Below, piece after piece: positions 2,399 through 59,292 of a stretch of DNA of 64,000 nucleotides. A program made the position numbers and the translations under genes. Under the pieces are notes generated by a model. It worked only from the letters and a program-made list of their open reading frames with translations. It had not been told where the DNA came from and did no database searches. Each line of letters begins with the position of its first letter. Within the stretch, counting starts at the first letter, position 1. Location: positions 684,693-748,692 of the forward strand of contig JAHLTZ010000011.1 of the NCBI GenBank assembly GCA_025786725.1. The letters run 5' to 3'. This DNA is from Syncephalis fuscata S228 (lineage: Eukaryota > Fungi > Zoopagomycota).

Positions 2399-2640
2399 GC
2401 TAAGCATTATGTGTCAGCATTTGCGCTAAGCATTATGTGCAGCATTTGCGCTAAGCATTATGTGCCAGCATTTGCGCTAAGCATTATGTGCCAGCATTTG
2501 CGCTAAGCATTATGTGCCAGCATTTGCGCTAAGCATTATGTGCCAGCATTTGCGCTAAGCATTATGTGCCAGCATTTGTGCTAAGCATTATGTGCCAGCA
2601 TTTGCGCTAAGCATTATGTGTCAGCATTTGCGCTAAGCAT
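2399..2640. repeat. Minisatellite, 26-bp unit GCTAAGCATTATGTGCCAGCATTTGC x ~9.3
   Basis: Head-to-tail copies with few substitutions and no spacers. Confidence 0.95.
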
Positions 2641-4181
2641 TTTTCATGCAACTAATTACATATCCGTTTTATTAAACATGAAACTGAATGCTGAATAGTA
2701 TCATTTATTAAAATACTTATTATTATATATTCATTATCTAGTACGCATATATCATCATTACAATACTATGTTATTACTGTTTACACTGTTTTATTTCTAA
2801 TTTTCTTCTCTATTTGCATGCTCATTAATCCATCATGTTTCTATTTTGCTTGAACTTGCTATTACTGTGGATATCCATTGAACTGCTCTACTAGCATCAA
2901 AGTCATAGCCAATTTGTATTAACTGATTTGTTTATCAAATAATTACACGTTACATATATGCATGAGCAAGTAAAAAAAATAATTTAGAAATTATTAGTAA
3001 CCAAGTTATTATTAAACAAATAATAGTTTTAAATAACTTATTGATACTATACAATAGGCTGATATAAAGTAGAATAAATGCACAATAGACAAGTATAAAT
3101 AGCGCTGTTGAAACTATAACACATATAATGCGATAAGTGGACTGAATGAAGTATATTGGAACATATAATAAATAGAATGTGTTTAGTATAGCATAGAATG
3201 ATACATAGTAGTGTGGAGCATATTACGAATGATATAAGTAAATTGTGGATATATGCATACTGAATAATGAATTTACGATTATGATTATTTTGGACCCTGA
3301 TGTTACTCACCACCCATCATCATGTTCAATAGATTAGATGCTATTAGATATTAGTCATTTGATTACCAAATAAACATTAAATGACTAATAGCATAAAATC
3401 AAGTATAATTATAGAATATGTCATCAGTAAAACAATAGCTGTAATAAGAAGAATAGATAACAAACAGTAAAGGCAAGTATATTTATAGAACAATGTCATC
3501 AGTAAAATAAGAAGAATGAACATCAATACATAAACAAATGTCATTATCATAGAACATAATATTATAATTGACAACCAAACTTTTAAGCATTGGACTCAGT
3601 ATATAAACAACAGAGTTTATTGAATGTTAAATAAAATACTTATAAGCATATCTATTCTAAGCTACGCCTTTGTATAAAACACAATAACAGACATTCATTT
3701 CATATACAATTGATATAAATCGTTTGCATATCTTTGAGAAATTAGCAATTTTAAAATAAGAATGTTTGCACATTTTTTTAGATTTCACTTGCCATATTAT
3801 ATGGTGCAATAAATGTAATCTCTGGGGGATTTGAAGTTTAAGCCTTGTATCTTTTATTTTAAAAAAAGGATAGAAACGCAAGTAAAATAGCTTTATATAT
3901 ATTAATGGGCTTGGTATTAATGTTCGAATTCTTTGTTTTAATATCTGTATTCACTGATAGCTTGTCGAAAAGCATGGCGCTCCAATGGAGTCATCTAATG
4001 TTGTGTAACCCACATGGCTCCTGGATGCAGCACCCAAGGATATAAATGATTGCAGCAGTTCCGTCGATGCCTTTGTCTAGACCAACGCCATCTTATTCTA
4101 ATAGTCTCACACTGCTACTTTATTGTAAACCTTTCTATTAACACCGTAAATACTACAGTTATTACTGTCAACACCGTTACC

Positions 4182-5240: not shown

Positions 5241-6471
5241 CTATGCTTTGGACTGAAGATATTGATAAAGTTTGTTAAACGCATAAATGGCTGCCTTAGT
5301 TAACCAGCGATAATTAGGTGAGTAGGCAACGCACTGTCTGTCTTGTTCCATATCCACACCAAGATAAACACGATGACGCTTGAGCTCAAGGACCGGGTCA
5401 GTTTCGGCATAAACAGAATTAGAACAATGCTCGTTTTCTTGATCTTGATGAGGATAGCACAAAACAGCCTTGTCATTCATTGCAGTAGAAATCCAGACTT
5501 CAGGGCCATAATGCTGATAATTAATTAATCTAGTGAAAAGCTGAGGTATGAGATCATTATAGTTTACAACACGAATGGAATTTGGAAGAAATCCGCCGGT
5601 CCTGTCATTGGCTGGTCGATATAGTTGTTGATTTGCCAATTTGGCAAACTCTGGATTACCAACGCGAGGTGCGCCAAATGTAACGAGTTGCTGTTCCATT
5701 TGCGGCATGGTATATCTAGCATCTAATGCAGCTAGGGTGGCAACAGCTATTAGAAAATAAAAAATTAGTATTGCTATTATTATTAATACATGTATGAATA
5801 CTTACCACCGCCTAAAGAATGGCCCAAAATGTAAGCGTATATTCAGGGTAGTCCTGCGCAGTATTTTTGACTGTTTCTGTAATATTGTCGCGAATAGAAT
5901 TGTAACAGCTAAGAAAGCCGGTGTGTACCATTGCATCTTTGTTTTCAAGCCATGATATACTTGTTTTTATAATACGAAGATCTTGGGCTCCTGCTGCAAC
6001 ATCAACTGTACCACGAAATGAAACAATAATACGGCGATGCTCATCATTGACGGCAACGTAGGCAAATGTACCGGTTCTATCATGATAAAATGTATCGATT
6101 AGCTTTGTACCAGCAGTCGCCCCTTCACATCGTAAACCACATTTCCATTCGGTAGGATCACAGCTAGATACAGATGCAAATTGGCCTAGCAATCTTACTT
6201 GCTCGATGGCAGAAGGTGGTAATCTAATTGGTTTGTTTATGGGCTCTAATTGGCTTTGGAATACAAGCTGGTTCGGCAGTACATTTGGAAGTACATTGTT
6301 TTGTGGTGCAGCCTTGACATTATTTAGTATAGATGGCACTGGACTAGTCGAGGATTTAGGAATTGAAAATGCAGAAGCTGATAAGCTAAACGTTGCTAAT
6401 AAAATATATTGGCAAAGCTATTGATATAGTCAGTTATTGCTATTGTTTTATATAGACATTATACCTACCAT
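5241..6471 (-). CDS. Secreted class-3 (Rhizomucor-type) lipase, copy 1; one 1-nt homopolymer frameshift at ~5827
   Basis: ATG-only exon 6469-6471; signal peptide LCQYILLATFSLSASA; SFRGT, VHTGF, GHSLGG (after restoring one T), TFGAPRVGN, NYNDLIP. Confidence 0.88.
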
Positions 6472-8080: not shown

Positions 8081-9338
8081 ATGGTAATATTAATGTGCGA
8101 ATAACAGTAGCAGTTGGCTAACTATTTTAACAGTTTTACCGACACATCTTATTAGTTCTTTTGGGCCTATCGACTTTTTCGCATGCAGTTCCTAGTAATA
8201 TTGCTGCACCAGTGCAAGATGCACACGACAATGTTAATACACCAACACAAAGCACAGCGCCATTAGGCAGCTCGTTAAGCGAGCCTATGGTCCAAACCTC
8301 GCCACTATATTCTAAAACAACCACTTCTCTGCCATCATACGTTATTGAAGAGGTGCGGACACTGGCTCAATTTGCTTCGGTGTCTGGCTGCGATCCAACT
8401 GGATGGGCATGTGGGCCACAATGTCAAGGCAGAACTGCTGGTACCCGTTACATTGCGTCTTTTTACGATCCGGCCACAAGTGCGTATGTATATATTGCTG
8501 TCAATGACCTGTATCGCCGTATTATTGTTTCTTTCCGCAACACAGTCAATCTTGCGTCAGTGTTGCAAGATCTTCGTATTCACCAAATAAGTGTGGGTTG
8601 GCTCAATAATCCAAAAGTCAGGGTACATACTGGTTTTCTCACTTGCTACAATGTTCTCCGCGATAATGTTAACCGAGTAGTCAGTGACATTGTGCGAACT
8701 TATCCTCAGTACACGCTTACATTCTTGGGTCATTCTTTAGGTGGTGGTAAGTATTTATTTATACTTGTTTTAATAATAGCAACAATACTAATTTAATGCT
8801 TTTATATTCAGGTATTGCCACGTTAGCTGCATTAGATGCTAGCTTTACAATGCCGCACATGGAACAACAACTTGTTACATTTGGTGCACCTCGCGTTGGT
8901 AATCCAGAGTTTGCCAAATTGGCAAACCAGCAATTATATCGACCAGCCAATGAAAGAACCGGCGGATTCCTTCCAACATCAGTTCGCGTTGTAAACACTA
9001 ATGACGTTGTGCATCAGCTGCCTCCTCTTTGGTTAGGCTATCAGCATCATGGTGCTGAGGTGTGGGTCCCCACTAATAATAATGATTTCGCCGTTCTTTG
9101 CCATCCCTCTGCTGACAAGGAGAATTTCAGCTGCGCCAACTCAATTTTAATATCCTTCTTTCAATTTGATCGTCACTCTATTTTCCTTGGAGTGACTGTT
9201 GGATACAATAGAATGTGCGTTGCGCCATCCCCCACCTTCTCTGTTCTACAGCCACAGAAGGAAGTTAAAACACTTAATGCGGCCATTAACACAATTACTG
9301 CCTTAAGAAATCCAGTCGATATGGCTCAGGTTATGTAG
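8081..9338 (+). CDS. Secreted class-3 lipase, copy 2, intact (exons 8081-8083, 8134-8746, 8812-9338)
   Basis: VHTGF, GHSLGG|G, TFGAPRVGN, VNTNDVV, YQHHGAEVW; canonical introns. Confidence 0.93.
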
Positions 9339-10639: not shown

Positions 10640-11891
10640 ATGGTAGGCCTAATTCTTATACACAGCAACAAATAACAGCAATAACTAATTATATCAATAG
10701 CTTTGTCAATTACTTTTATTGGCAATGCTTAGCGTATCCGCTTCTGCACTTTCAGTTCCCGAGTTTAAGACTATTCCGGTGCCATCTATACCAGATGCTC
10801 TTAACGTTATACCACCAAACAATGTACTACCGAATATTTTGCGAATCCGCCCTTATTAGGAAACCAAGCTGATATACTGCCCCTACCAACTATACTACCA
10901 TCTTCTGCCATTGAAGAAATAAGAATACTGGGACAATTTGCATCTGTATCTAGTTGTGATCCAACTGAATGGCAGTGTGGCTCACGCTGTGAAAGTGCAA
11001 CTGCTGGCACCAATTTGGTAAAGAATTTTACGACCCAGTTACTGGTGCATATGCCTATGTTGCTGTCAACGAACGCTATCAGCGTATTATCATCGCTTTC
11101 CGTGGTACGGTTAATTTTGAGGGACTAGTGCAAGATATTCGCATTTTCCAAACACCTGTCGGCTGGCTCGACAATAAAAATGTTAAAGTGCACATTGGTT
11201 TTCTCAGCTGCTACAACGCCCTTCGCAATGATGTCGCTCAAGAAGTTCAAAAATTTATACAAGCCTATCCTCAGTACACGCTTACATTCTTGGGCCATTC
11301 TTTAGGCGGTGGTAAGTATTCATACATGTATTAATAATAATACAATACTAATTTTTATTTTCTAATAGCTGTTGCCACCCTAGCTGCATTAGATGCTAGA
11401 TATACCATGCCGCAAATGGAACAGCAACTCGTTACATTTGGCGCACCTCGCGTTGGTAATCCAGAGTTTGCCAAATTGGCAAATCAACAACTATATCGAC
11501 CAGCCAATGACAGGACCGGTGGATTTCTTCCAACATCGATTCGTGTTGTACATTATAAAGATCTCGTACCTCATTTGCCATTTAGCTGGATGGGCTATCA
11601 GCAACACGGCCCTGAAGTGTGGATACCTATGTATGATGTCATGGATGCTTTTTATGTAATCCTTACCAAGGCCAAGAAAGTCGTCTATGTGCTAATGCTC
11701 GTCTGCCGTATCTTGACTTTTATCTTCATAGCAACTTCTTTGGTATAACCGTTGGCTATAGCGAACAATGCATCGCTCCATCACGTAAAATATTTAGATT
11801 GACGCTTGATCCAGCGCTTAAGAGACTCAACGAAACCGTCTTCTCAGCTGCCTATCTGCTGCACCAACGCGTTATTCATCATATTATTTAG
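10640..11891 (+). CDS. Secreted class-3 lipase, copy 3; three 1-nt homopolymer frameshifts (~10838, ~11027, ~11651)
   Basis: Same exon structure as copies 1 and 2; AFRGT, VHIGF, GHSLGG, TFGAPRVGN, HYKDLVPHLP. Confidence 0.85.
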
Positions 11892-20469: not shown

Positions 20470-22398
<1,929 letters not shown>

Positions 22399-22582
22399 AG
22401 TTGATGATGAAACACTACATCGAATTGAACATGCCCCCAATTTATACACTAACAACAACAACAAGTTATACTAATAAAAGTACTTTGTCACTTGCCATTG
22501 ATGTCTTTCTTTTTTAATACTCTTTCTTTTCTACGCATTTCTTTTCAAATATTACTTAGTATCTAAAGCTGGTCTTATTTAT

Positions 22583-23614
22583 ATGCATTTATTATTTAAA
22601 CAAGCTATGTTCACGCAAACAACATTCACGCAAATAGTGTGGCGGCTATTATGGGCAATAAGTATAGCTACATGCCTACTTTGCAATTACGTTCAAGCAG
22701 CAAAAGTAGAAAAATCTACTACAATAAAGTCTTCTGAAAAGATTAGCGACACTGCTGCCGGTGTTACGGCATTTATCTATCTTGTAGCCGGGTCCTGTTT
22801 ATGTTTTAGAGGCAGTTGGACCATACGACCTTTATTTGCCGTGGCTGGTCTACTTAGCACAACCTATGCTAGTCTAGCATTTCTGGCCTGGTTTTCTTAT
22901 GGATTAAATATGGCCAACAATACGGCCGTACAGATACTGATTCTGCTTATTGCACTAATCAACGGCGTCATAGTAGCATTATTAACAACGCGTTACGGTG
23001 CCGTGGGTGCTCTAGTAACCGGTGGTATGTTAGGCTGTTTCATCGCTATACGACTTGCCATATTCGCCAATATAACCATCGATATCATCCATTTAGACAA
23101 GGGCCAGCTTGCATTAAATTATCCGAGTAATGGCCATAGTAGTAGTGTGGACGCGACCTATCTCGTCTTTCTTATAACAGTTGTTATGATTATTGCAGCG
23201 TGGCTCACCTATCTTCTTGAACCACTGGTAGTTATTTTAATTACTACGGTTATGGGTAGTGTTTGGTGTGCCATGGCGATTGATACACTATGCAGAACCA
23301 ATTTTATTGCTGCAGTTACGGCGGTTGTCTATGGATTACATCCGATATCTGTAGCCAACGATGCAGAGATTATTAATCTTAAGACCATAGACCAGAATGA
23401 TCCACAATTCTACCAAGATGGCTGGGAGGTGAAGCCAGTTGATTATAATGGCGGTATTGGTGGATTATGGACACTAACGGTTATATTAACCCTTACTGGT
23501 ATGTTTTTACAACATAAACAAATGTGTGCCAAGTCAGATGGTTATCAAAACATTCGATTACCTATGTTCCGTCGTTTTTTACGTCATTACGGAGTATACA
23601 AGAAGCAATATTAA
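22583..23614 (+). CDS. Multi-pass membrane protein, DUF4203/TMEM198-like (intronless)
   Basis: Signal-like N-terminus, ~7 hydrophobic segments, GSCLCFRGSWTIRPLFAVAG and Gly-rich GALVTGGMLG helices. Family call is from recall. Confidence 0.7.
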   Translation: MHLLFKQAMFTQTTFTQIVWRLLWAISIATCLLCNYVQAAKVEKSTTIKSSEKISDTAAGVTAFIYLVAGSCLCFRGSWTIRPLFAVAGLLSTTYASLAFLAWFSYGLNMANNTAVQILILLIALINGVIVALLTTRYGAVGALVTGGMLGCFIAIRLAIFANITIDIIHLDKGQLALNYPSNGHSSSVDATYLVFLITVVMIIAAWLTYLLEPLVVILITTVMGSVWCAMAIDTLCRTNFIAAVTAVVYGLHPISVANDAEIINLKTIDQNDPQFYQDGWEVKPVDYNGGIGGLWTLTVILTLTGMFLQHKQMCAKSDGYQNIRLPMFRRFLRHYGVYKKQY

Positions 23615-23630
23615 ATATTTGAGCCATTGT

Positions 23631-23841
23631 ACTTTGAGTCCTAGCTTTAAACTAGGATAAAAAAATCAATAACTTGAACAATAAACCATCGATCAGTTTT
23701 TACTACTAAAAAGTGCGATTTGTTGAAGCAATGCTACATCGACTCATATTGAATTAATCAGTGGCAATCAATCTGCATTATTTTCATATCGAAATAAATA
23801 AATAATATTTCATGCTACTTACAATAAAGTATTACATTTGA
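23631..23841 (-). ncRNA. Candidate omegaRNA scaffold / element right end for Fanzor relic 1
   Basis: Directly 3' of the stop; ends in hairpin TCCTAG-TTTAAAG-CTAGGA then CTCAAAGT. Confidence 0.4.
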
Positions 23842-24119
23842 TTATGACGTTGGTGCAACAGTGTCAGTTTGATTTCTTATAATAATAGGCAGTAAGAAAT
23901 CAGAAGGCCTTGATTCACCACTGGCCATTGTACTGAATATACTGTGCATGTTTCTGCTGGCATTAACATCACGCTGTCATACCATACGACAATTATTGTT
24001 TTGACAAACAAGTACGCTATGCATTGTGCTGTTGTGTTCTTCCAGATGTAAATTCGCCATCTTTTTTTCTTGCATTTGGAACAGACTTTTGATGTATTGT
24101 ATTCATCAAGTGACCGAAT
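23842..24119 (-). pseudogene. Fanzor/TnpB-like nuclease C-terminal relic no. 1 (RuvC-II, Zn finger, RuvC-III)
   Basis: Manual translation: IRSLDEYNTSKVCSKCKK/MANLHLEEHNSTMHSVLVCQNNNCRMV*QRDVNASRNMHSIFSTMASGESRPSDF...; one A-run frameshift and one TGG>TGA (23977-23979). Confidence 0.88.
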
Positions 24120-24617
24120 AGGTAGAGGCTATGTGCTAGTGTATATGTTAATAAATGTTGCTCCATATTATTGTTACTGTAAAGTATTCAAAGCATTATA
24201 ATTTGATATTTAATGTCACTTACCATCCAGTTCCATGTTTAGTAAAACAACAAATGTGTAGTTCAATCAAGTAAAGGATGTCAATTTGGTCTTTTGATAA
24301 TGAATCACACGAGTCTACTTATAAATTATTGAATATTAGTGAGCTATTTACTCATTTCACTTTTTTTTATTAATACTTTTAGACACAATTAAACACCCAT
24401 TTATTACTATAAAATGTATAATATTACATCCAACATTAATTAATTTATGTGTAATTATCAGTATAATATGTAATTAATAAGTTATTTTATTATTGCGTTA
24501 ATATATATATTGTCATCTATGATATTAATTGTTTAAATGCCATTTATTTAGCTAGATTGACTATAGCGAAAGTGGCTATTTAATAAACAACTTTTATAAT
24601 AATTATATTAATATGAT

Positions 24618-24824
24618 CTTACAGCACAAATATACCCAAAATGCAACAGTAGAAGATTAGAAAATAGAAAAGATCATTCAGAGGCAAGAAACCACACTGT
24701 ACGTAGTAACAATAACAACTGCGGAATGACATGGAATTGCAATCATATGACTTCTATTAATATTTGATCAATCTTCCTACACATGGCCAACAACAACAAT
24801 AATCAACCTCAAATGTTTCAATGA
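24618..24824 (+). pseudogene. Fanzor/TnpB-like nuclease C-terminal relic no. 2 (more decayed, different subfamily)
   Basis: In-frame LTAQIYPKCNSRRLENRKDHSEARNHTVRSNNNNCGMTWNCNHMTSINI*SIFLHMANNNNNQPQMFQ*, matching the LTSQIC..C...C..WNRD.MA..NIRSIFLHMA.NNN.RP..F pattern I recall for fungal Fanzor1. Confidence 0.75.
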
Positions 24825-24923
24825 AATCAAATGAAAACATTATACCTATGTTTGTTGTACATAACAGTACGACTTCAATTGGAACGAATCTTACTTGAAG
24901 ACTCCAAATGTAGGAGTCAAAGT
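24825..24923 (+). ncRNA. Candidate omegaRNA scaffold / element right end for Fanzor relic 2
   Basis: Hairpins CTTCAA/TTGAAG (24873-24900) and GACTCC/GGAGTC (24900-24918), ending TAGGAGTCAAAGT. Confidence 0.4.
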
Positions 24924-25026
24924 TTAATCAAAATATTAATTAATTATTAATTACCTTTTAAATTTTATTTTTCAATTTTTCATGCAACTAGTGTCTTGAC
25001 CTCTTTCTTGATCTAAAGTCTTTAAC

Positions 25027-25806
25027 ATGTTTACTTTACGCGCTTTGACACAGACACGCTTGGCGGGTGCACGCGTAAGAGATCGTGTATAGTCTAGTTG
25101 ATCCTGTGCTAACTTGTTTTTTACAGTCATTCTCTGCCACGGCTGCCGCAGCTAGCTGTAAGTTATAAATGGATAGATTAATTACGTACGATCGCTAATA
25201 ATAACACTGATAACAACAACAACAATAATAATATCAATAGTGTCGGTCAATCGCGCAATTCTTGTCGGTAATCTAGCGTCGGATCTCCGTGTACAAGAAT
25301 TAAACGAGAGTCGTACTATGGTGGATTTCACTTTGGCCACTAACCGTGTTCACCGTAATCGCGAAGGTATTAAGATAAATACACTTATAGTGAAATAATA
25401 ATAACAATAATAACAATTAACGCGTTTATTTAAAAGGTGAATTGGTTCGAGAGACCGACTGGCATCGTGTCCGTTCTTTTGTCACACCGGCTCGTGCCAA
25501 CTATTTTAACGAAGCTTTAAAGAAAGGGTAACAGCATTGATGTAGAATTAAATAAATTATTGGCTGACTTGCCATCAAGAAATGTTGTTATGGTAGAGGG
25601 TTCCATTCGCTACAACTCATACACGGATAAGGAAGGACAAGAAAAAATGTTACGAATATCATAGCCGGTAAGTGATGGAATAGAATAGAGCGATGATGAC
25701 GAAGCTAATTGTGAATATAGACAAGGTCCAAAACTTTGGTGAATATCGCCGCCAACCACGCGAAGAAGGCAACGAAGAAGGTTCTGATTCTCGTAGCGAC
25801 TTTTAA
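25027..25806 (+). CDS. RIM1: Mitochondrial single-stranded DNA-binding protein (6 exons; A-run frameshift at ~25645)
   Basis: Arg-rich presequence MFTLRALTQTRLAGARSFSATA; VNRAILVGNLASD, FTLATN, TDWHRV, KKG-NVVMVEGSIRYNSYTDKEG. Missing from the ORF track because the exons are short. Confidence 0.9.
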
Positions 25807-41678: not shown

Positions 41679-43574
41679 ATGCGTTTATCAAATTGGTCTG
41701 CGTTATGCGCAACTTTCATTATAATGAAACTGGCTGATGAAAGTATAACTCTAACGGAATCTGCGCCTATAAGGGTAGGTATTTGCCAGTATTACGTACA
41801 TATTAATTAAATGTTTTATCTATTGATAGCTCCCCACCCTCAAGCTGCCAAATCTTCCTACATTCAATTCATTTAAACCATCTACAACAATTGGAGCACC
41901 AACGACAGGGTGGAAGCTTCCAAATATGCCATCGGTTTTTACTCCTAAAATTTTACCAGCTAACGGTGCGGTAAAGTCAGCAACTGTGCCAACTGTGGCG
42001 ACAATGCCAAATGTGGCGACAATATCAACTGCAAATACGGGGGTTTTAAAAACAAATCCACTAAATACTAATGCAGTTTCGAATACAGCAAATGTTGGTT
42101 CTATAAGCTCAATGATTCCAAACAATGCATTTAATTCTCAAACATCTCATAACGCCAATACAGCTGTTACTGCTAGTACTAACAATGCTAATAGAGGTGT
42201 TACCGCTAGTACCAACAATGCCAATACAGCTGTTACTGCTAATACCAACAATGCCAATACAGCTGTTACTACTGGTACCAACAATGCCAATACAGCTGTT
42301 ACTAATACAGCTGCTACTACTGGTACTAATACAGCTGCTACTACTGGTACTAATACAGCTGCTACTACTGGTACTAATACAGCTGCTACTACTGGTACTA
42401 ATACAGCTGCTACTACTGGTACTAATACAGCTGCTACTACTGGTACTAATACAGCTGCTGCTATTGGTACTACTACCGGCGCTACTAATGGTGTCAGCGT
42501 TGGTACAAATACTGGTGAAGCCGGAACGTATAACGGTGGTGGCACAGGCTCTACTAATCAGGGAAATCATCGAGATGACGGCAATGGGGGTTCATCACAT
42601 AATTCAAACTCTGATAATCAAATGACCCAAATGGTTATGCAGATGGAAGCAAATTCGCAAAAGGCAAATGCCCAAGCAGCAAAATATGCTGCGTGGGTGC
42701 TGCACTACCAGCTGTTGTTGGTGCAGGTGCTACAGCTTATGGAAACTCGGAATCAACAAAGGCTGCGACTGCAGCTGCGGCCGCACAAAATGATGCTAAT
42801 GTTAAGATTGAGCAAATGCGATCTGATGCTACTCAAAAGTCTGTAGAAAGTAGCGAAAAGCTTGCTGAACAGCAAATTGCTGTAACTAAGGAGGCGAATA
42901 AGGCATCACTTGATCAGGCGGCTGCACAAGCAGAAATGCAAAACAAGGTGAATAACCAAGCACTTGATCAAAGCAAGGCAATTTTCGATCTTCAAATGGC
43001 AGCCGCCAAAGGAGGTAATAATCAAGTACCTGCAGCAAACACTGTGACCGGTGCAGCAAATTCTGGCGCTGGAACTGCCACACCAAACTCTACTGGAACT
43101 GCCACACCAGGTTCTAGCGCTACCGGCGGCCAGACGAATTCTAATACCAACATGGCAGGTACTGCTAACGGTCAAATGAATTCTAATACCAACATGGCAG
43201 GCACTGCTAACGGTCAAATGAATTCTAATGCCAATATGGCAGGTACTGCTAACGGTCAAATGAATTCTAATACCAACATGGCAGGCACTGCTAACGGTCA
43301 AATGAATTCTAATGCCAACATGGCAGGTACTGCTAACGGTCAAATGAATTCTAATGCCAACATGGCAGGTACTGCTAACGGTCAAATGAATTCTAATGCC
43401 AACATGGCAGGTATTACCAATGGTCAGATAAATTCTAATGCCAACATGGCAGGTATTACCAATGGTCAGATAAATTCTAATACCAACATGGCAGGTACTG
43501 CTAACAGCCAGATGCTTGCTAATACTGGCTCTACCATGGCTTCCGGTGCAAATAACGCACAATTTCATGTCTGA
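41679..43574 (+). CDS. Putative secreted Asn/Thr/Ala/Gly-rich protein with three tandem-repeat arrays; 1-nt frameshift at ~42692 joins ORFs 41926 and 42693
   Basis: Exon 1 MRLSNWSALCATFIIMKLA...SAPIR, intron 41775-41829; arrays (TNNANTAVTAS)x4-5, (TNTAATTG)x7, (NSNANMAGTANGQM)x9. Confidence 0.75.
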
Positions 43575-48903: not shown

Positions 48904-49074
48904 TGTAACAACCGTAAAATAGGATATAATGGAATAAAGATTATCTTTTATTAAACAGAAATTGTGTGTTATTTATAAGCTTTGCGGAGCTTTAATTTAA
49001 GGTGTTGTGGGAAAATAATTGCATAATATTTAAATTATACAATTATTTCCCGTAACGAATATAATATCGTTACA
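48904..49074 (-). repeat. 3' LTR of element B
   Basis: Direct repeat of 59312-59482. Confidence 0.95.
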
Positions 49075-50878: not shown

Positions 50879-51216
50879 TGTAACCGTAGATACAGCGAAC
50901 TGTTGCGGTTACTACGAGTCACAATACAATAATGTATATAAAATAAAAATGAATATTGAAAGTGAACTAATGTCTTTATTTGTGGTCATAATCATACGCG
51001 TATTTATATTGTTCTATTGGATATATGGAATATCTAAGTAGAACAATAAAAGAAAATAAAATAAAAATAAAAGAAAATAAAAGATAAAGATAAAACAATA
51101 CGCGGTGGCGGAGTGTTAACTTCATCGTGGACCATGTGTGATGATCGGTGTGTTTAAACACCGATCATAATGTCTAAAAATGGTAATAATAAATGAGAGG
51201 GAGAATTTTTGTTACA
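50879..51216 (-). repeat. 3' LTR of element C
   Basis: Direct repeat of 56105-56442. Confidence 0.95.
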
Positions 51217-51231
51217 ATACCCCCCTCCCTC

Positions 51232-54200
51232 TCAGGCGCTTGTCCCAAGTGCTAATCGTATGTGTGTGGAGTGTTCGTATTGATTTAATAGTTCTTGAGC
51301 ATTTTGCAAGTTTTCAATTGGCTCCCAAGAACTGTCATCTTTTGAGTATCCTTTCCATTTTACTAAGTATTCCTCCACGTCATTCATCCCCACTTTTCTT
51401 GTTCTTCTACCTATTATTCTTTCCACTTCCCACTCAGCTTGTCCTTCAATCATTTCTGGCATAGGCATAGTAATTGCCGTTGGTCGTCCTGGAAATACGT
51501 TCGGATCTTTATACCTGGTAAGCTGAGAGATGTGTATAACTGGGTGAATGCGCATGCCTGGTGGTAGTTCGATCTTGTACGCGGTCGGACTAATGACCTC
51601 TATGATAGTGTACGGGCCAGTTTTACGCGTACGAAGGGCGGAGTTTGACTGTTCTGCTACGTGTCGTGGCATTGTGTGTCGTGTTGACAGCATTACTCGA
51701 TCACCTATTTGGAAGGTGTCATCTCGACGTCGTTGGTTAGCATATTGTGCCTGTCTATCCTGAGCGTACGATATGTTGTCTTTTACCGCCTTTTGTATCG
51801 CTTCTAGTCGCTGTAAAAACTCCTCAGCTGCTGGTACTGTTATATTATCGCTATCAGCTGGCATAGTCGTTGTTATTGGATGACGTCCATATACAGAGAA
51901 GAAAGGTGTAATACCAGTAGTAGCGTTAGTACTATTGTTATAGGCAAATTCTAATGCAGGTAAGTATTTATCCCAATCATCTTGTTGTTGGCTAATAACA
52001 TGACGTAACATTTCTTCGATGGTTCTGTTGGTTCGCTCAGTCTGGCCGTCAGTCTGTGGATGATTTGCAGTTGATCTGGCTAATTTAGTACCGGTAAATT
52101 CAAATAAGGCTTCCCAGAATCGGCTAGTAAATCGTGGGTCACGATCAGAGATTATGGATCGTGGAAGACCATGTAGACGATATACATGGTCGAAGTATAG
52201 TCGTGCGGTGTCAACAGCTGTGACAGTGTTGGTAGTAGGCACGAAGTGGGCTTGTTTACTAAAGCGGTCAACTACTACCATTAACGCATCTGCACCTTTT
52301 TCAGTGAGTGGTAGATGTGTAATAAAATCCATACTAACTGAGTCCCATGCATGTGCAGGTATTTCAAGTGGTTGTAATAAGCCACCTGGTCGTCGATTAG
52401 TGGCCTTATTACGTTGGCAAGTATCGCAGGAAGTGACATAGCGGTGGACGGTGTTGTGTAGTGATGGCCAGTAAAAATGGCGATGAATAGCCAGGTATGT
52501 TTTATCTACACCTAGATGGCCGGCTACGATGGCATCGTGATGATCGTGTAGTATATCTTGACGTAATTGGTTATTTTTAGGTACACATAATCGATCACCG
52601 TTGAAATATAACAATCCATCAGTTAGTCGATACTTGACTAACTTGGTACGAAGAGCTGGAAGTGGCGTTGTCGTATTAAGCTGGGCGTATATTTCACCAA
52701 AGTCAACATCGTTGGCGTACAAGTTTTTAATTTGATCAATATATGTAAAACTGACAGTAGTTAAACTGGACAGTTGTAAATCAGGCCGTCTGGATAATGA
52801 ATCGGCTACAATATTGTTTTTCCCGGGCTTATATTCGATCAATACGTCATATTCTTGTAATAGTTCTGACCATCTTGCTTGTCTGGTTGATAAATTCGGT
52901 TGACTCTGGAAGTACTGCAAGGTTTTATGGTCAGTATACGCGTGAAATGACGATCCATGTAAGTAGTGGCGCCAAATCTTTAAAGCATCTATTAATGCTA
53001 ATAGTTCTTGTTCATGTACCGGATAATTGCGTTCAGCGGGCTTCATTTTGCGCGAATGATAAGCAATGGGGTGCCAATGGCCATCACGATCTTGCTGCAA
53101 CAAGGCAGCACCTACAGCAAAGCCAGAAGCATCGGTTTCTACACGGAAAGGCTGATGTACGTCGACTATTTGTAATACTGGAGCTTGGGTCATTGTCTTC
53201 TTTAGTATATCAAATGATTTTTGAGCTTCAATGGTCCATAAGAAACGACGATCTTGACATAGTAGATCGGTAAGTGGTGTGGCTATAGCAGAGTAATTTT
53301 TAATAAACTTTCTATAGTAGTTGGCCAAGCCTGTAAAAGCGCGTATATCAGTGACGTTTCGTGGTGTAGGCCAATCAGAAATGGCCTTTATCTTAGCTGG
53401 ATCAGCTTTTACACCATTAGCACATAGCAAATGGCCTAAATATTCAACTTCATCCTTAAATAATTCACATTTTGACCATTTGGCGTATAAGTGGTTGTCG
53501 CGAAGTATTTGTAATACTTGGCGTAGGTGTCGTTCGTGGTCTTCTGGTGTTTTACTGTAGATGAGAATATCGTCCAAATAGACAATAACACATTTGTCTA
53601 GTAATGGCCTAAATAGATAGTTTACCAGTGTTTGAAAACTGGATGGTGCATTACTTTGACCAAAACTAACTACTAGCCATTCAAAGTGACCATAGCGGGT
53701 GCGAAAGGCCGTCTTGGGTATATCCTCTTCTACTACACGTAGTTGATGATAAGCAGAGCGTAGATCTATCTTAGAAAAGACAGTTGCGCCTAACACTTGG
53801 TCGAATAAATCTTCAATCCTTGGCAATGGGTACTTGTTCTTGATAGTGATTTTATTCAGCGCTCGATAATCAACACACATGCGCATACCACCATCTTTCT
53901 TCTTGACGAAAAGAACAGGCGCACCGTAGGGCGATATACTAGGACGAATATATCCCGCGTCAAGTAATTCGGTAAGTTGTGTTTTAAGTTCTTTAAGTTC
54001 CAGAGGGGACAATCGTATAAGGCGTTACTGGGTGGTGTTGCGCCTGGTATCAAATCGATACGATGATCTAATCCATCACGTTTTGGCGGCAATTGTTTCG
54101 GTAGTTTGTCGGGAAATACGTCAGCAAAGTCGTTGCGTAATCCAGTCAATACTGGAGTGATGGATGGGTCATTTGAGTGATTAGCAGCTTCATTTAGCGG

Positions 54201-54884
54201 ATTATCGGCTGGTCGTACAATGGCTAGGTGTAATTCATCTGTTCGTTTAGCATAGCGTTTAAATTGTAAGGCAGATAATGGCAATATGGTTGGTTGTCTA
54301 TGTGCATTTGCTTGCCATACAATGTGTCGATTATCATGCATAAACGTAACAGTGTTAATTAACCAATCTATCTGTGGATTATAGCGGGCTAGCCACGGTT
54401 TACCGAGTATTACGTCGTGTTCTAAAGGAACAACCAAAAACGATAAACGGTCTTTGTAACCAGTGGAAGTAAGGAGCGCACCAGCCAGTTGGCGGTCACA
54501 CGTATACGAACGGCCATCTGCCACGTGTACGGTCGATGGGTATTTAACTTTATGGGTGTGTGCGCGAATATGTTTCACAAGATTTGCGGATACAAAGTTA
54601 TCAGCTGCTCCACTATCTATTAGTACCGTAACTTTTCTACCTAATAAACGAGCATTGATACGTAATAAATCGTGAGCGTGTGGATATTTTGACAATAAAC
54701 TTTGTTCCTTTAAAAGTGCATCAGTGTCATCAACAACATTAGCATGAGGAAATAATGGCGCAGAAACAAGCAATTCATCATCAGAAGTAAGCGAGAGAAG
54801 ATCGGGGGTGGCATCAACAGAAATAGTATTTAGTTGGGCACCAGTAGGTTGTGATGCTGACACTACTGGTGCTGGACTTTTCCC
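51232..54884 (-). CDS. pol: Element C Pol (PR-RT-RH-IN-chromodomain); apparent 1-nt loss at ~54015
   Basis: LIDSGA, YLDD, ETDAS, HH..GH..CDTC, SDRD, EWEVERI...YLVKWKGY. Confidence 0.93.
54811..54884 (-). promoter_or_regulatory. -1 ribosomal frameshift signal of element C
   Basis: G GGA AAA heptamer, 5-nt spacer, stem GCACCAGTAG/CTACTGGTGC, loop GCATCA complementary to downstream TGATGC. Confidence 0.8.
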
Positions 54885-56047
54885 GTATTCAAAGGACAAA
54901 AACGCATGATGTGGCCATATTGGCGACAGCGGAAACAGCCGCCGTTTTGTCGTAACGTTTCGCGTTCAGCATCAGTGAGTGGGGGTAACCGATTAATGGT
55001 GTCTAGTTCCATTGGTATAGGGCCATTTCTTGGTTGTGTGTTAATCGGAGGGCGAAACTGTTGTTGTTGCGTTGGACGAGGTGTGTTATGGCGAACGTTG
55101 TTAGTTGATGATTTGCCAATGTACTTGCGTAACGAATCAAAATGAGTAGCCACTTCTATGGCTGATTGTAATGTAGACGGTGTAGCTTTTTGTACTTCGT
55201 ATTTAACTTCGTGATTCAGTCCATTAATAAACATAATACGTAAAGCTAACTGCCACATTTCGGAATCAGGCATAGGAAAAGTGTGCCTTAAATTGTTAAA
55301 TTCTAACGTATAATCATTGACACTTTTGTTGGCTTGTCGTAACATGTGAAGACGACTAAAAGCGTCTTCTTCTACCGAAGTACCGGGACAGATGTGTTGG
55401 CGTAGTGCGTGAGCAAACGCACTCCAAGTGGTATATGGATGACTATAGTCACCGTCAGAGTGAATAGTATTACTCTGCCACCAACTAGAGGCAGTGCCAT
55501 CTAAATAAGTGGCGGCTACTTCGATGCGTTCAATTTCATCAGGGATATACCTGACATATTGCCGTGCACGGTACAACCAAGTCTCTACTGAAATATCCTT
55601 ATCATTGCCGTTGTATCGTGGCGGGGCAGATGGACGAGCAGTAGGAGGGGCAGTGACAGAAGTAGATGGAATAGCGGCAATAGCAGCGGCAGTATTGGCA
55701 GCGGCAGTAACAACAGCATCGGCAGTAGCAGCATTATTTTGGGACACAATTTGCGTTACCAAACTTGAAATAAAGTCAGCGTTGGTAACGAAACTTGTGT
55801 TAGGCAATTCTGGGTTCATAATGGGTGTTATTTCTTCTTGAGTATCAGTAGTGTATTCGTTCGTGTGGCTTGTGATCGGTGGTTCGTACTGGGTATCGGT
55901 GTATTCGTTCGTGTGGCTTGTGATCGGTGGTTCGTACTGGTTATCTGGGTATCGAAAGGTTACTGGTGGATCTTGGATGAGTTCGTCGGCGAAAGATTGA
56001 CGGGCTTGTTCGTGGTCGAAGTATTTCGCACCACGTCGTTGGTTCAT
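54863..56047 (-). CDS. gag: Element C Gag
   Basis: PMELD and CFRCRQYGHIMRFC knuckle; 45-bp tandem duplication (QYEPPITSHTNEYT x2). Confidence 0.92.
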   Translation of the reverse strand: MNQRRGAKYFDHEQARQSFADELIQDPPVTFRYPDNQYEPPITSHTNEYTDTQYEPPITSHTNEYTTDTQEEITPIMNPELPNTSFVTNADFISSLVTQIVSQNNAATADAVVTAAANTAAAIAAIPSTSVTAPPTARPSAPPRYNGNDKDISVETWLYRARQYVRYIPDEIERIEVAATYLDGTASSWWQSNTIHSDGDYSHPYTTWSAFAHALRQHICPGTSVEEDAFSRLHMLRQANKSVNDYTLEFNNLRHTFPMPDSEMWQLALRIMFINGLNHEVKYEVQKATPSTLQSAIEVATHFDSLRKYIGKSSTNNVRHNTPRPTQQQQFRPPINTQPRNGPIPMELDTINRLPPLTDAERETLRQNGGCFRCRQYGHIMRFCPLNTGKVQHQ

Positions 56048-56084
56048 ATCACTGTAAGTCAAGGCAACGAGGTGGATAGGTTTA

Positions 56085-56102
56085 AACTACCCGTTGCTAC
56101 CA
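56085..56102 (-). promoter_or_regulatory. Primer-binding site of element C (tRNA-iMet type)
   Basis: TGGTAGCAACGGGTAGTT, 2 nt inside the 5' LTR. Confidence 0.85.
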
Positions 56103-56104
56103 TA

Positions 56105-56442
56105 TGTAACCGTAGATACAGCGAACTGTTGCGGTTACTACGAGTCACAATACAATAATGTATATAAAATAAAAATGAATATTGAAAGTGAACTAATGTC
56201 TTTATTTGTGGTCATAATCATACGCGTATTTATATTGTTCTATTGGATATATGGAATATCTAAGTAGAACAATAAAAGAAAATAAAATAAAAATAAAAGA
56301 AAATAAAAGATAAAGATAAAACAATACGCGGTGGCGGAGTGTTAACTTCATCGTGGACCATGTGTGATGATCGGTGTGTTTAAACACCGATCATAATGTC
56401 TAAAAATGGTAATAATAAATGAGAGGGAGAATTTTTGTTACA
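56105..56442 (-). repeat. 5' LTR of element C
   Basis: Direct repeat of 50879-51216, followed by the PBS. Confidence 0.95.
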
Positions 56443-59018: not shown

Positions 59019-59111
59019 CGTGTACTATATACTGAATCGTAATTTTAAAACAGCGGTGCTTATTTTCAAACACTGATAAGCAAAAATAAAATAAAATTGA
59101 AAAGAGGACAA

Positions 59112-59286
59112 TGCGACAAACGCGATATACGGTGCGACAAACGCAAAATAACGGTGCGACAAACGCAAAATAAACGGTGCGACAAACGCAAAAATAAACG
59201 GTGCGACAAACGCAAAAATAACGGTGCGACAAACGCAAAATAAACGGTGCGACAAACGCAAAAATAACGGTGCGACAAACGCAAAT
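59112..59286. repeat. ~23-25-bp tandem repeat (AAATAACGGTGCGACAAACGCA) x ~7-8 in the leader of element B
   Basis: Directly visible; units differ mainly in A-run length. Confidence 0.92.
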
Positions 59287-59292
59287 ACTAGT

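What the first reader, a model, noticed from the sequence alone, without database searches (positions are those of the whole stretch)
23631..24923. Double-headed Fanzor cassette: two divergent Fanzor 3' ends whose termini form an inverted repeat
Seen: two different Fanzor/TnpB-like C-terminal fragments point outwards (- strand 24119-23842; + strand 24618-24824), neither in the ORF track. Each stop is followed by AATCAAATG, then a non-coding tail ending in a 6-bp hairpin and TAGGA(C/G)TCAAAGT. The 1293-bp unit is therefore bounded by a 12/13 inverted repeat (23631-23643 / 24911-24923). Known: TnpB/Fanzor omegaRNAs are encoded at the element right end, take their guide from flanking DNA, and protein-less ghost loci exist. 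Inference: either a non-autonomous element that could supply two omegaRNAs (one guide per flank) to intact Fanzors in trans, or two independent insertions fused by deletion of their 5' parts.
Basis: partly seen in the sequence, partly recalled or inferred. Interest (0 to 1): 0.88.

Follow-up and report, generated by a model that had tools for sequence, protein, structure and literature searches.

The report
Decayed two-headed Fanzor transposon family
In a parasitic fungus, a small jumping DNA element carries the broken tail ends of two different RNA-guided nuclease (Fanzor) genes back to back; it was copied dozens of times long ago, but it has decayed and no working nuclease gene was found in the genome.

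Summary
The genome is Syncephalis fuscata. Both heads are real, decayed Fanzor1 C-termini of two lineages, A and B, 35% identical. The unit is not unique: B relics have hundreds of candidate copies, and 21 of 24 other A-bearing loci also carry a divergent B head. A third, left-type end lies between the heads; that end plus B also occurs alone as a ~600-bp MITE. Best reading: a B MITE and an A right-end relic joined head to head and spread as one non-autonomous composite with two right ends. Both outer ends carry end-specific ~20-bp hairpins, probably ancestral omegaRNA scaffolds. Copies are ~88% identical, tails are no better conserved than the rest, and no intact Fanzor was found, so a working two-guide donor is unlikely. 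The TSD and the mobilising transposase are unresolved. Side lead: an intron at the Fanzor C-terminus. The scan noted such relics, including this layout, elsewhere in this genome before.

The parts
23620..24934 (.). Whole composite non-autonomous TIR element; ends uncertain by 1-2 nt because both termini are decayed in this copy
   Evidence: Homology to other copies starts and stops at these points
23620..23649 (-). Outer end X: TIR downstream of head A; family terminus GG, here TG
   Evidence: 29 distinct X ends conserved to 12 nt past the AAAG core, then lost
23622..23674 (-). Terminal hairpin of end X, about 21 pairs, includes the TIR; candidate 3' stem of the ancestral omegaRNA of A
   Evidence: -17.1 kcal/mol, z -3.45 here; mean z -1.5 over 32 ends; 81% of cells paired, weak covariation
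23675..23777 (-). Rest of the A tail, with two further predicted stems
   Evidence: RNAalifold on 22 copies, covariation term only -0.4
23778..23822 (-). Intron-like segment 19 nt after the A stop (GTAAGT donor; acceptor AG mutated in this copy)
   Evidence: GT in 27 of 34 copies, acceptor 45-60 nt on; not verified by RNA
23842..24148 (-). Head A: Fanzor1 C-terminal fragment (end of RuvC-II, zinc finger, RuvC-III), pseudogene
   Evidence: (PF07282 E 0.003, under the cut-off); deletion against longer copies
24149..24339 (.). Linker that belongs to the A side; no coding match found
   Evidence: Contiguous with A in L019, L024, L050
24340..24360 (-). Remnant of internal left end X' of the B module; ~25 bp of its TIR deleted between short direct repeats
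   Evidence: Window compared with L013; intact in many other composite copies
24340..24934 (+). B module: X' end, upstream segment, head B, tail, Y end; occurs alone as a 580-800-bp MITE
   Evidence: L016, L017, L021, L026, L039, L040 and the end pairs L085-L090
24612..24845 (+). Head B: Fanzor1 C-terminal fragment of a second lineage, pseudogene; intron-less form; family stop at 24843-45 mutated
24886..24930 (+). Terminal hairpin of end Y, about 18 pairs in the family, decayed here; includes the TIR (24906-24934)
   Evidence: Majority sequence of 26 ends -18.2 kcal/mol; this copy z -0.8; no covariation
22583..23740 (+). Flanking host gene (TM7S3/TM198-like); stop at 23612-14, 5 bp from the element; its transcript contig runs about 120 nt into the element's X end
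   Evidence: PF13886; spliced RNA contig 21800-23740

Best explanation
An old, inactive, non-autonomous cut-and-paste composite. One TIR transposon family (imperfect ~27-bp TIR, 5'-GG...CC-3') once carried several Fanzor1 genes (lineages A, B and a third, C), each followed by a tail whose last ~50 nt fold back on the right TIR, as in omegaRNA scaffolds. A deletion derivative of B (left end X', C-terminal fragment, right end Y) became a MITE. One such MITE came to lie head to head with the 3' part of an A element; because all ends share the TIR, the transposase could use the two outer right ends (X and Y) and move the pair as one unit. It spread, gave many internal-deletion derivatives, and has since decayed without visible selection. 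Shown: identity of the heads, copy number, recurrence of the layout, ends, internal left end, stand-alone B module, hairpins, decay, no intact Fanzor found. Inferred: order of events, mobilisation in trans by a DDE transposase (not identified), omegaRNA ancestry of the tails.
For: 21 of 24 other A loci have a divergent B head within 1.2 kb, with gaps from about 0 to 625 bp. Homology ends at X and Y, with unique flanks. One linker/X' junction is shared by at least 10 loci and a second by at least 6. The B module stands alone with near-perfect TIR pairs. 243 terminal-motif matches against 9 controls. Hairpins at X and Y (mean z -1.5 and -1.4), none at X' (+0.5), each inner arm matching its own terminal variant. 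Median best-pair identity 88%. Tails 78-85% identical, against 82-91% for the rest of the unit. RD codons intact in 8 of 24 A copies and 2 of 36 B copies. An 804-aa relative finds only residues 655 and beyond; a RuvC-I-region profile finds one locus, which is broken.
Against: No TSD could be shown (best 8 bp, z 1.75, p 0.05 before correction for 12 lengths), so cut-and-paste movement rests on TIRs and unique flanks. No matching transposase: no Merlin or Harbinger domain, and the one MULE examined has unrelated TIRs. No stand-alone A element with its own left end was seen. Loci were picked by similarity to this unit, so the counts are not a census, and some loci are assembly duplicates.
Confidence: 0.7

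Rival explanations
1. Dual omegaRNA donor: the two-right-end unit spread, or is kept, because it supplies one guide from each flank to intact A and B Fanzors in trans, helping it home into empty sites.
For: Both outer ends carry long end-specific hairpins and the internal left end does not; three stems are possible in the A tail; A almost never occurs without B; ghost omegaRNAs of S. punctatus work with SpuFz1 (PMC10432273); X ends show a slight excess of kept pairs (5/500 and 12/500 shuffles).
Against: No intact Fanzor found. Hairpin arms are the least conserved part (78-82%). No covariation at Y; the X signal is within what relatedness alone can give. Many composites have lost a whole head or swapped tails. 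No RNA contig over 23763-23913 or 24820-24970, though such data would miss small RNAs. A role in the past cannot be excluded.
Confidence: 0.14
2. The parent was a single large element that encoded two Fanzors back to back, and all copies are internal deletions of it; the internal end is a later or subterminal feature.
For: All A copies seen belong to composites or their derivatives; a graded series of internal deletions exists.
Against: The internal X' end is a complete left TIR at which hundreds of B-type copies appear to end; two different junctions exist; the one near-full-length relic carries a single Fanzor; described Fanzor1 TIR families carry one Fanzor each (PMC3627910).
Confidence: 0.13
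3. Two unrelated dead insertions fused by a deletion at this locus only.
For: This copy has private deletions.
Against: The same layout and junction recur at many loci with different flanks.
Confidence: 0.02

Closest known systems
Fanzor1-carrying non-autonomous TIR elements of fungi (SPu-1; ROr-4, PBl-3, MCi-4; Bao and Jurka 2013, PMC3627910)
   Same: Fanzor1 C-terminal motif next to a ~30-bp TIR; no transposase in the element; sister elements share ends but carry different Fanzors, as the DFa and ESv families do; closest named proteins are from Mucoromycota.
   Different: Two Fanzor lineages in one mobile unit, pointing outwards; only C-terminal fragments; GG termini; neither the TA nor the 9-bp TSD of those families could be shown.
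Spu-1 ghost loci of Spizellomyces punctatus (Saito et al. 2023, PMC10432273)
   Same: Many TIR-bounded copies without a working Fanzor, with a structured right end of similar length (B tail about 95 nt).
   Different: Spu ghosts are strongly conserved at the TIR and omegaRNA, lack ORF remnants, have one right end and sit beside 19 full-length genes; here the tails decay like the rest, there are two right ends, and no intact gene was found.
Fanzor1 reRNAs that include the TIR (SfAV; Yoon et al. 2023, PMC10711439)
   Same: TIR pairs with an inner arm; three stems possible in tail A.
   Different: No expression or covariation shown here.
Composite or nested MITEs moved by alternative ends (general transposon biology, own knowledge)
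   Same: Two adjacent elements with shared TIRs move as one using the outer ends.
   Different: Here both outer ends are right ends with Fanzor and omegaRNA-like remnants.

Membership tests
Fanzor1 | C-terminal motif TS-xx-C4 zinc finger-RD (PF07282) | tested here: met
   Present in decayed form in both heads; sister copies pass the PF07282 cut-off; weak PDB hits to SpuFz1, GtFz1 and TnpB
Fanzor1 | Relatives are 600-800-aa eukaryotic proteins with RuvC-I DPG and the Fanzor1 glycine and glutamate | tested here: met
   528 relatives, many of 640-800 aa with invariant DPG and DE-x-TS; named ones are Mucoromycota. Head B matches the same set at up to 51%
Fanzor1 | Intact ORF with all three RuvC catalytic residues | tested here: not met
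   Fragments with stops and frameshifts; no RuvC-I for A or B anywhere in the assembly
Functional omegaRNA ghost locus | Structured right end overlapping the TIR | tested here: met
   Hairpins at X and Y, not at X'
Functional omegaRNA ghost locus | omegaRNA region conserved above the rest, with covariation | tested here: not met
   78-85% against 82-91%; covariation absent at Y, marginal at X
Functional omegaRNA ghost locus | Intact cognate Fanzor in the same genome | tested here: not met
   caveat: draft assembly of 371 contigs, searched exon by exon
Functional omegaRNA ghost locus | Small RNA running 14-15 nt past the end | not testable with these tools
   Only one run, as assembled contigs of long RNA
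Non-autonomous TIR element (MITE) | TIRs, many dispersed copies with unique flanks, no transposase | tested here: met
Non-autonomous TIR element (MITE) | Target-site duplication | tested here: inconclusive
   29 end pairs: only length 8 is above shuffled pairs (z 1.75); 5 pairs match 6-7 of 8
Tc1/mariner | TA duplication directly outside the TIR | tested here: not met
   The TA after the AAAG core is internal; conservation runs 10 nt past it
Merlin | GG termini, 8-9-bp TSD, IS1595-type transposase | tested here: inconclusive
   GG termini met, weak 8-bp signal, no PF12762 match in the genome
MuDR/MULE | 9-bp TSD and TIRs shared with a MULE transposase element | tested here: not met
   No 9-bp signal; the one MULE examined, of 15 hits, has unrelated 213-nt TIRs
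PIF/Harbinger | 3-bp TSD and DDE_Tnp_4 transposase | tested here: not met
   No 3-bp signal; no PF13359 match

The most novel reading that the evidence does not exclude
The two-right-end composite was favoured because it made two different omegaRNAs, one per flank, for two Fanzor1 lineages acting in trans, and the intron at the Fanzor C-terminus sets or regulates the 5' end of the omegaRNA: a spliceosomal counterpart of the intron/guide coupling known from IStrons.
Probability: 0.08. Interest if true: 0.75.

Novelty: new variant of a known kind. Interest (0 to 1): 0.33.

Why it matters
As it stands this is a fossil. It extends Fanzor1 to a Zoopagomycota mycoparasite (I found no paper linking the two) and shows that two Fanzor right ends can be joined and amplified as one element, a layout I found in none of the papers read. 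It offers no working nuclease. Two leads matter more than the locus itself. First, an intron at the very end of fungal Fanzor1 genes, just upstream of the omegaRNA-like tail, could bear on how eukaryotic omegaRNAs are cut out of polymerase II transcripts, and can be tested in Mucorales that have intact genes. Second, the closest named relatives come from the group this fungus parasitises, which raises host-to-parasite transfer.

Tried and rejected
TA-flanked Tc1/mariner reading (my first guess): rejected, the TA is internal. TSD search: inconclusive. Merlin and Harbinger transposases: none. MULE at C351: unrelated TIRs. Same TIR in relatives: not found; a Mucor flavus relative of lineage C sits in a TA-flanked element with 92-nt TIRs, the Hesseltinella copies showed no TIR, an Absidia cylindrospora copy has a different 27-bp TIR. 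TGTAAGT as the native end of A: rejected, two Hesseltinella copies stay alike for 268 nt past the stop. Viral contigs: no relative. Word-based protein search with head B: nothing. Rfam: nothing. Tree of 115 columns: A and B are separate, the rest poorly resolved, so no donor is claimed. The 274-aa open frame at C68 is not a Fanzor gene. Paper searches for a two-headed layout: nothing relevant. In one search I changed a few letters of one B copy inside the script so that a pattern would find its RD codons; it gave no output and nothing rests on it.

Full report
Setting. The window is G000:C13:684693-748692 of a 29.4-Mb assembly in 371 contigs. A neighbouring gene matches a Syncephalis fuscata protein on a contig of the same length, 748,692 bp, with next hits in Thamnocephalis and another Syncephalis. 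The genome is therefore S. fuscata, a Zoopagomycota fungus that parasitises Mucorales (lifestyle from own knowledge). The unit lies 5 bp after the stop of a TM7S3/TM198-like gene and just before a spliced, expressed gene.

The heads. Six-frame translation shows a Fanzor-type C-terminus on each strand, pointing outwards. Head A has a frameshift, a stop and a deletion of about 130 bp relative to longer copies. Head B has lost the RuvC-II acid, two zinc cysteines and the RD motif. Better-preserved sister copies pass the PF07282 cut-off. A stop-free A copy finds 528 proteins; the best are 46-53% identical and many are 640-800 aa with the match at the C-terminus and invariant DPG and DE-x-TS motifs. 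All named ones are Mucoromycota. A and B are 35% identical over 69 aa and fall apart in a weakly resolved tree. They are two Fanzor1 lineages.

Copy number and layout. The unit has 730 DNA candidates in the genome; head A has 271 and head B 827 protein candidates, with much overlap and only 150 scored each. Among 49 distinct fetched loci, 24 carry head A and 21 of these carry a divergent head B within 1.2 kb. About ten more keep the A tail, the linker and B but have lost the A coding part. Homology drops to zero at the outer ends. So the two-headed layout is a family trait and moved as a unit. These counts come from loci chosen by similarity and are not a census; several loci are assembly duplicates, which I removed by hand.

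Ends. The best-preserved copies show an imperfect TIR of about 27 bp that begins with GG and differs at positions 3-6 between ends. A 21-mer of this end matches 243 times against 9 controls. Three end types occur: X after head A, Y after head B (with a variant Y2), and X', which opens the B module. X' lies between the heads in most composites, with one junction shared by at least ten loci and a second by at least six. In the window about 25 bp of X' are deleted, which hides it. The X'-B-Y module occurs alone as a 580-800-bp element with unique flanks. No TSD length is clearly supported: 8 bp is the only one above shuffled pairs (z 1.75). No Merlin or Harbinger transposase was found, and the MULE examined has unrelated TIRs. 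The superfamily stays open.

omegaRNA-like tails. The last 50-55 nt at X and Y fold back as hairpins of 18-21 pairs in which the TIR is the 3' arm; the inner arm matches each end's own terminal variant, and X' has no such arm (mean z -1.5, -1.4 and +0.5). Tail A can form two more stems. This fits reports that the TIR is part of the Fanzor1 RNA scaffold (PMC10711439; PMC10432273) and suggests that both tails were once omegaRNAs; this is inference. They are not maintained now: the inner arms are 78-82% identical between copies against 82-91% elsewhere in the unit, covariation is absent at Y and marginal at X, and the window's Y hairpin has decayed (z -0.8). Rfam has no match. The one RNA run shows the host mRNA contig entering the X end to 23740 on the opposite strand and no contig over the two tails; contigs on head B carry other letters and come from other copies. 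Such data cannot show small RNAs.

No intact nuclease. An 804-aa Hesseltinella relative matches only from residue 655 on. A profile of the RuvC-I region of 33 relatives finds a single locus: a near-full-length Fanzor1 of a third lineage, with several frameshifts and stops, cut just after the DEY motif and ending in a Y2 end. Open frames at PF07282 hits do not exceed 168 aa. Copies have a median best-pair identity of 88%, and the RD codons survive in 8 of 24 A and 2 of 36 B copies. The family is old and appears inactive. A gene missing from this draft assembly cannot be excluded.

Mechanism. Most likely (0.70) a B MITE and the 3' part of an A element came to lie head to head and, sharing TIRs, were moved together by their two outer right ends; internal deletions then gave the series seen. 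A dual-guide donor, now or in the past, is less likely (0.14), as is a single two-gene parent (0.13). A one-off fusion is refuted.

Side lead. B tails come in a long and a short form that differ by a 48-49-nt GT...AG segment with a branch-like motif. Without that segment the long form has the same codon register and the same terminal stop as the short form, which is what intron presence and absence would give. A has a similar segment 19 nt after its stop, and a donor-like hexamer lies within 60 nt of the stop in 7 of 7 relatives (6 strict matches, chance 2-8% each). In one of them it falls just outside a TIR, so the pattern is not uniform, and no RNA confirms it.

Limits. 

Verdict. A real but decayed element: a new variant of known Fanzor1-carrying non-autonomous TIR elements. 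First-stage readers have flagged Fanzor relics 311 times in this genome, once with this same layout. Interest 0.33.

Noticed in passing
window 23778-23822 (-); L039, L010, L002 and other long-form B tails; L082, L099, L101-L104, L106: Intron-like GT...AG segment at or just after the Fanzor1 stop, directly upstream of the omegaRNA-like tail; present/absent between two B subfamilies with frame and stop preserved. Hesseltinella appears to have two in a row. Not confirmed by RNA.
   Followed up: partly
window 22583-23740: The host TM7S3/TM198-like transcript contig runs about 120 nt into the element, so the element may supply this gene's 3' UTR.
   Followed up: partly
L084 (G000:C317:733280-735550, -): The only near-full-length Fanzor1 in the assembly: third lineage, multiply broken, closest to a Mucor flavus protein, ending in a Y2 end of the same TIR family.
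   Followed up: yes
P0004-P0019, P0083, P0154: All named close relatives are Mucoromycota, the host group of this mycoparasite; host-to-parasite transfer is possible but untested, and the tree is unresolved.
   Followed up: partly
L109:496-2925 (G000:C351:14095-16524): MULE with 213-nt TIRs (93% alike) and a three-part transposase with long open frames, inserted flush against a Y end; similar domains at C90, C336, C339.
   Followed up: partly
G000:C313:139.7-148.6 kb and C328:389.9-399.7 kb: Pairs of well-preserved outward-facing ends 9-10 kb apart with different flanks; could be long elements or separate MITEs. Interiors not read.
   Followed up: no
window 50879-56404: Two identical 300-nt direct repeats 5.2 kb apart enclosing long ORFs: looks like a recent LTR retrotransposon; a second pair of identical 171-nt repeats at 48904 and 59312 surrounds it.
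   Followed up: no
window 2414-2693, 43043-43565, 59100-59290: Tandem arrays with 26-, 42- and 23-nt units.
   Followed up: no
window 5539-6448, 8461-9070, 10670-11627: Three related gene-sized copies, one inverted, 72-96% alike.
   Followed up: no
window 25074-25726: Spliced, well-covered gene whose exons read like a single-stranded-DNA-binding protein (from memory of the motifs; not searched).
   Followed up: no
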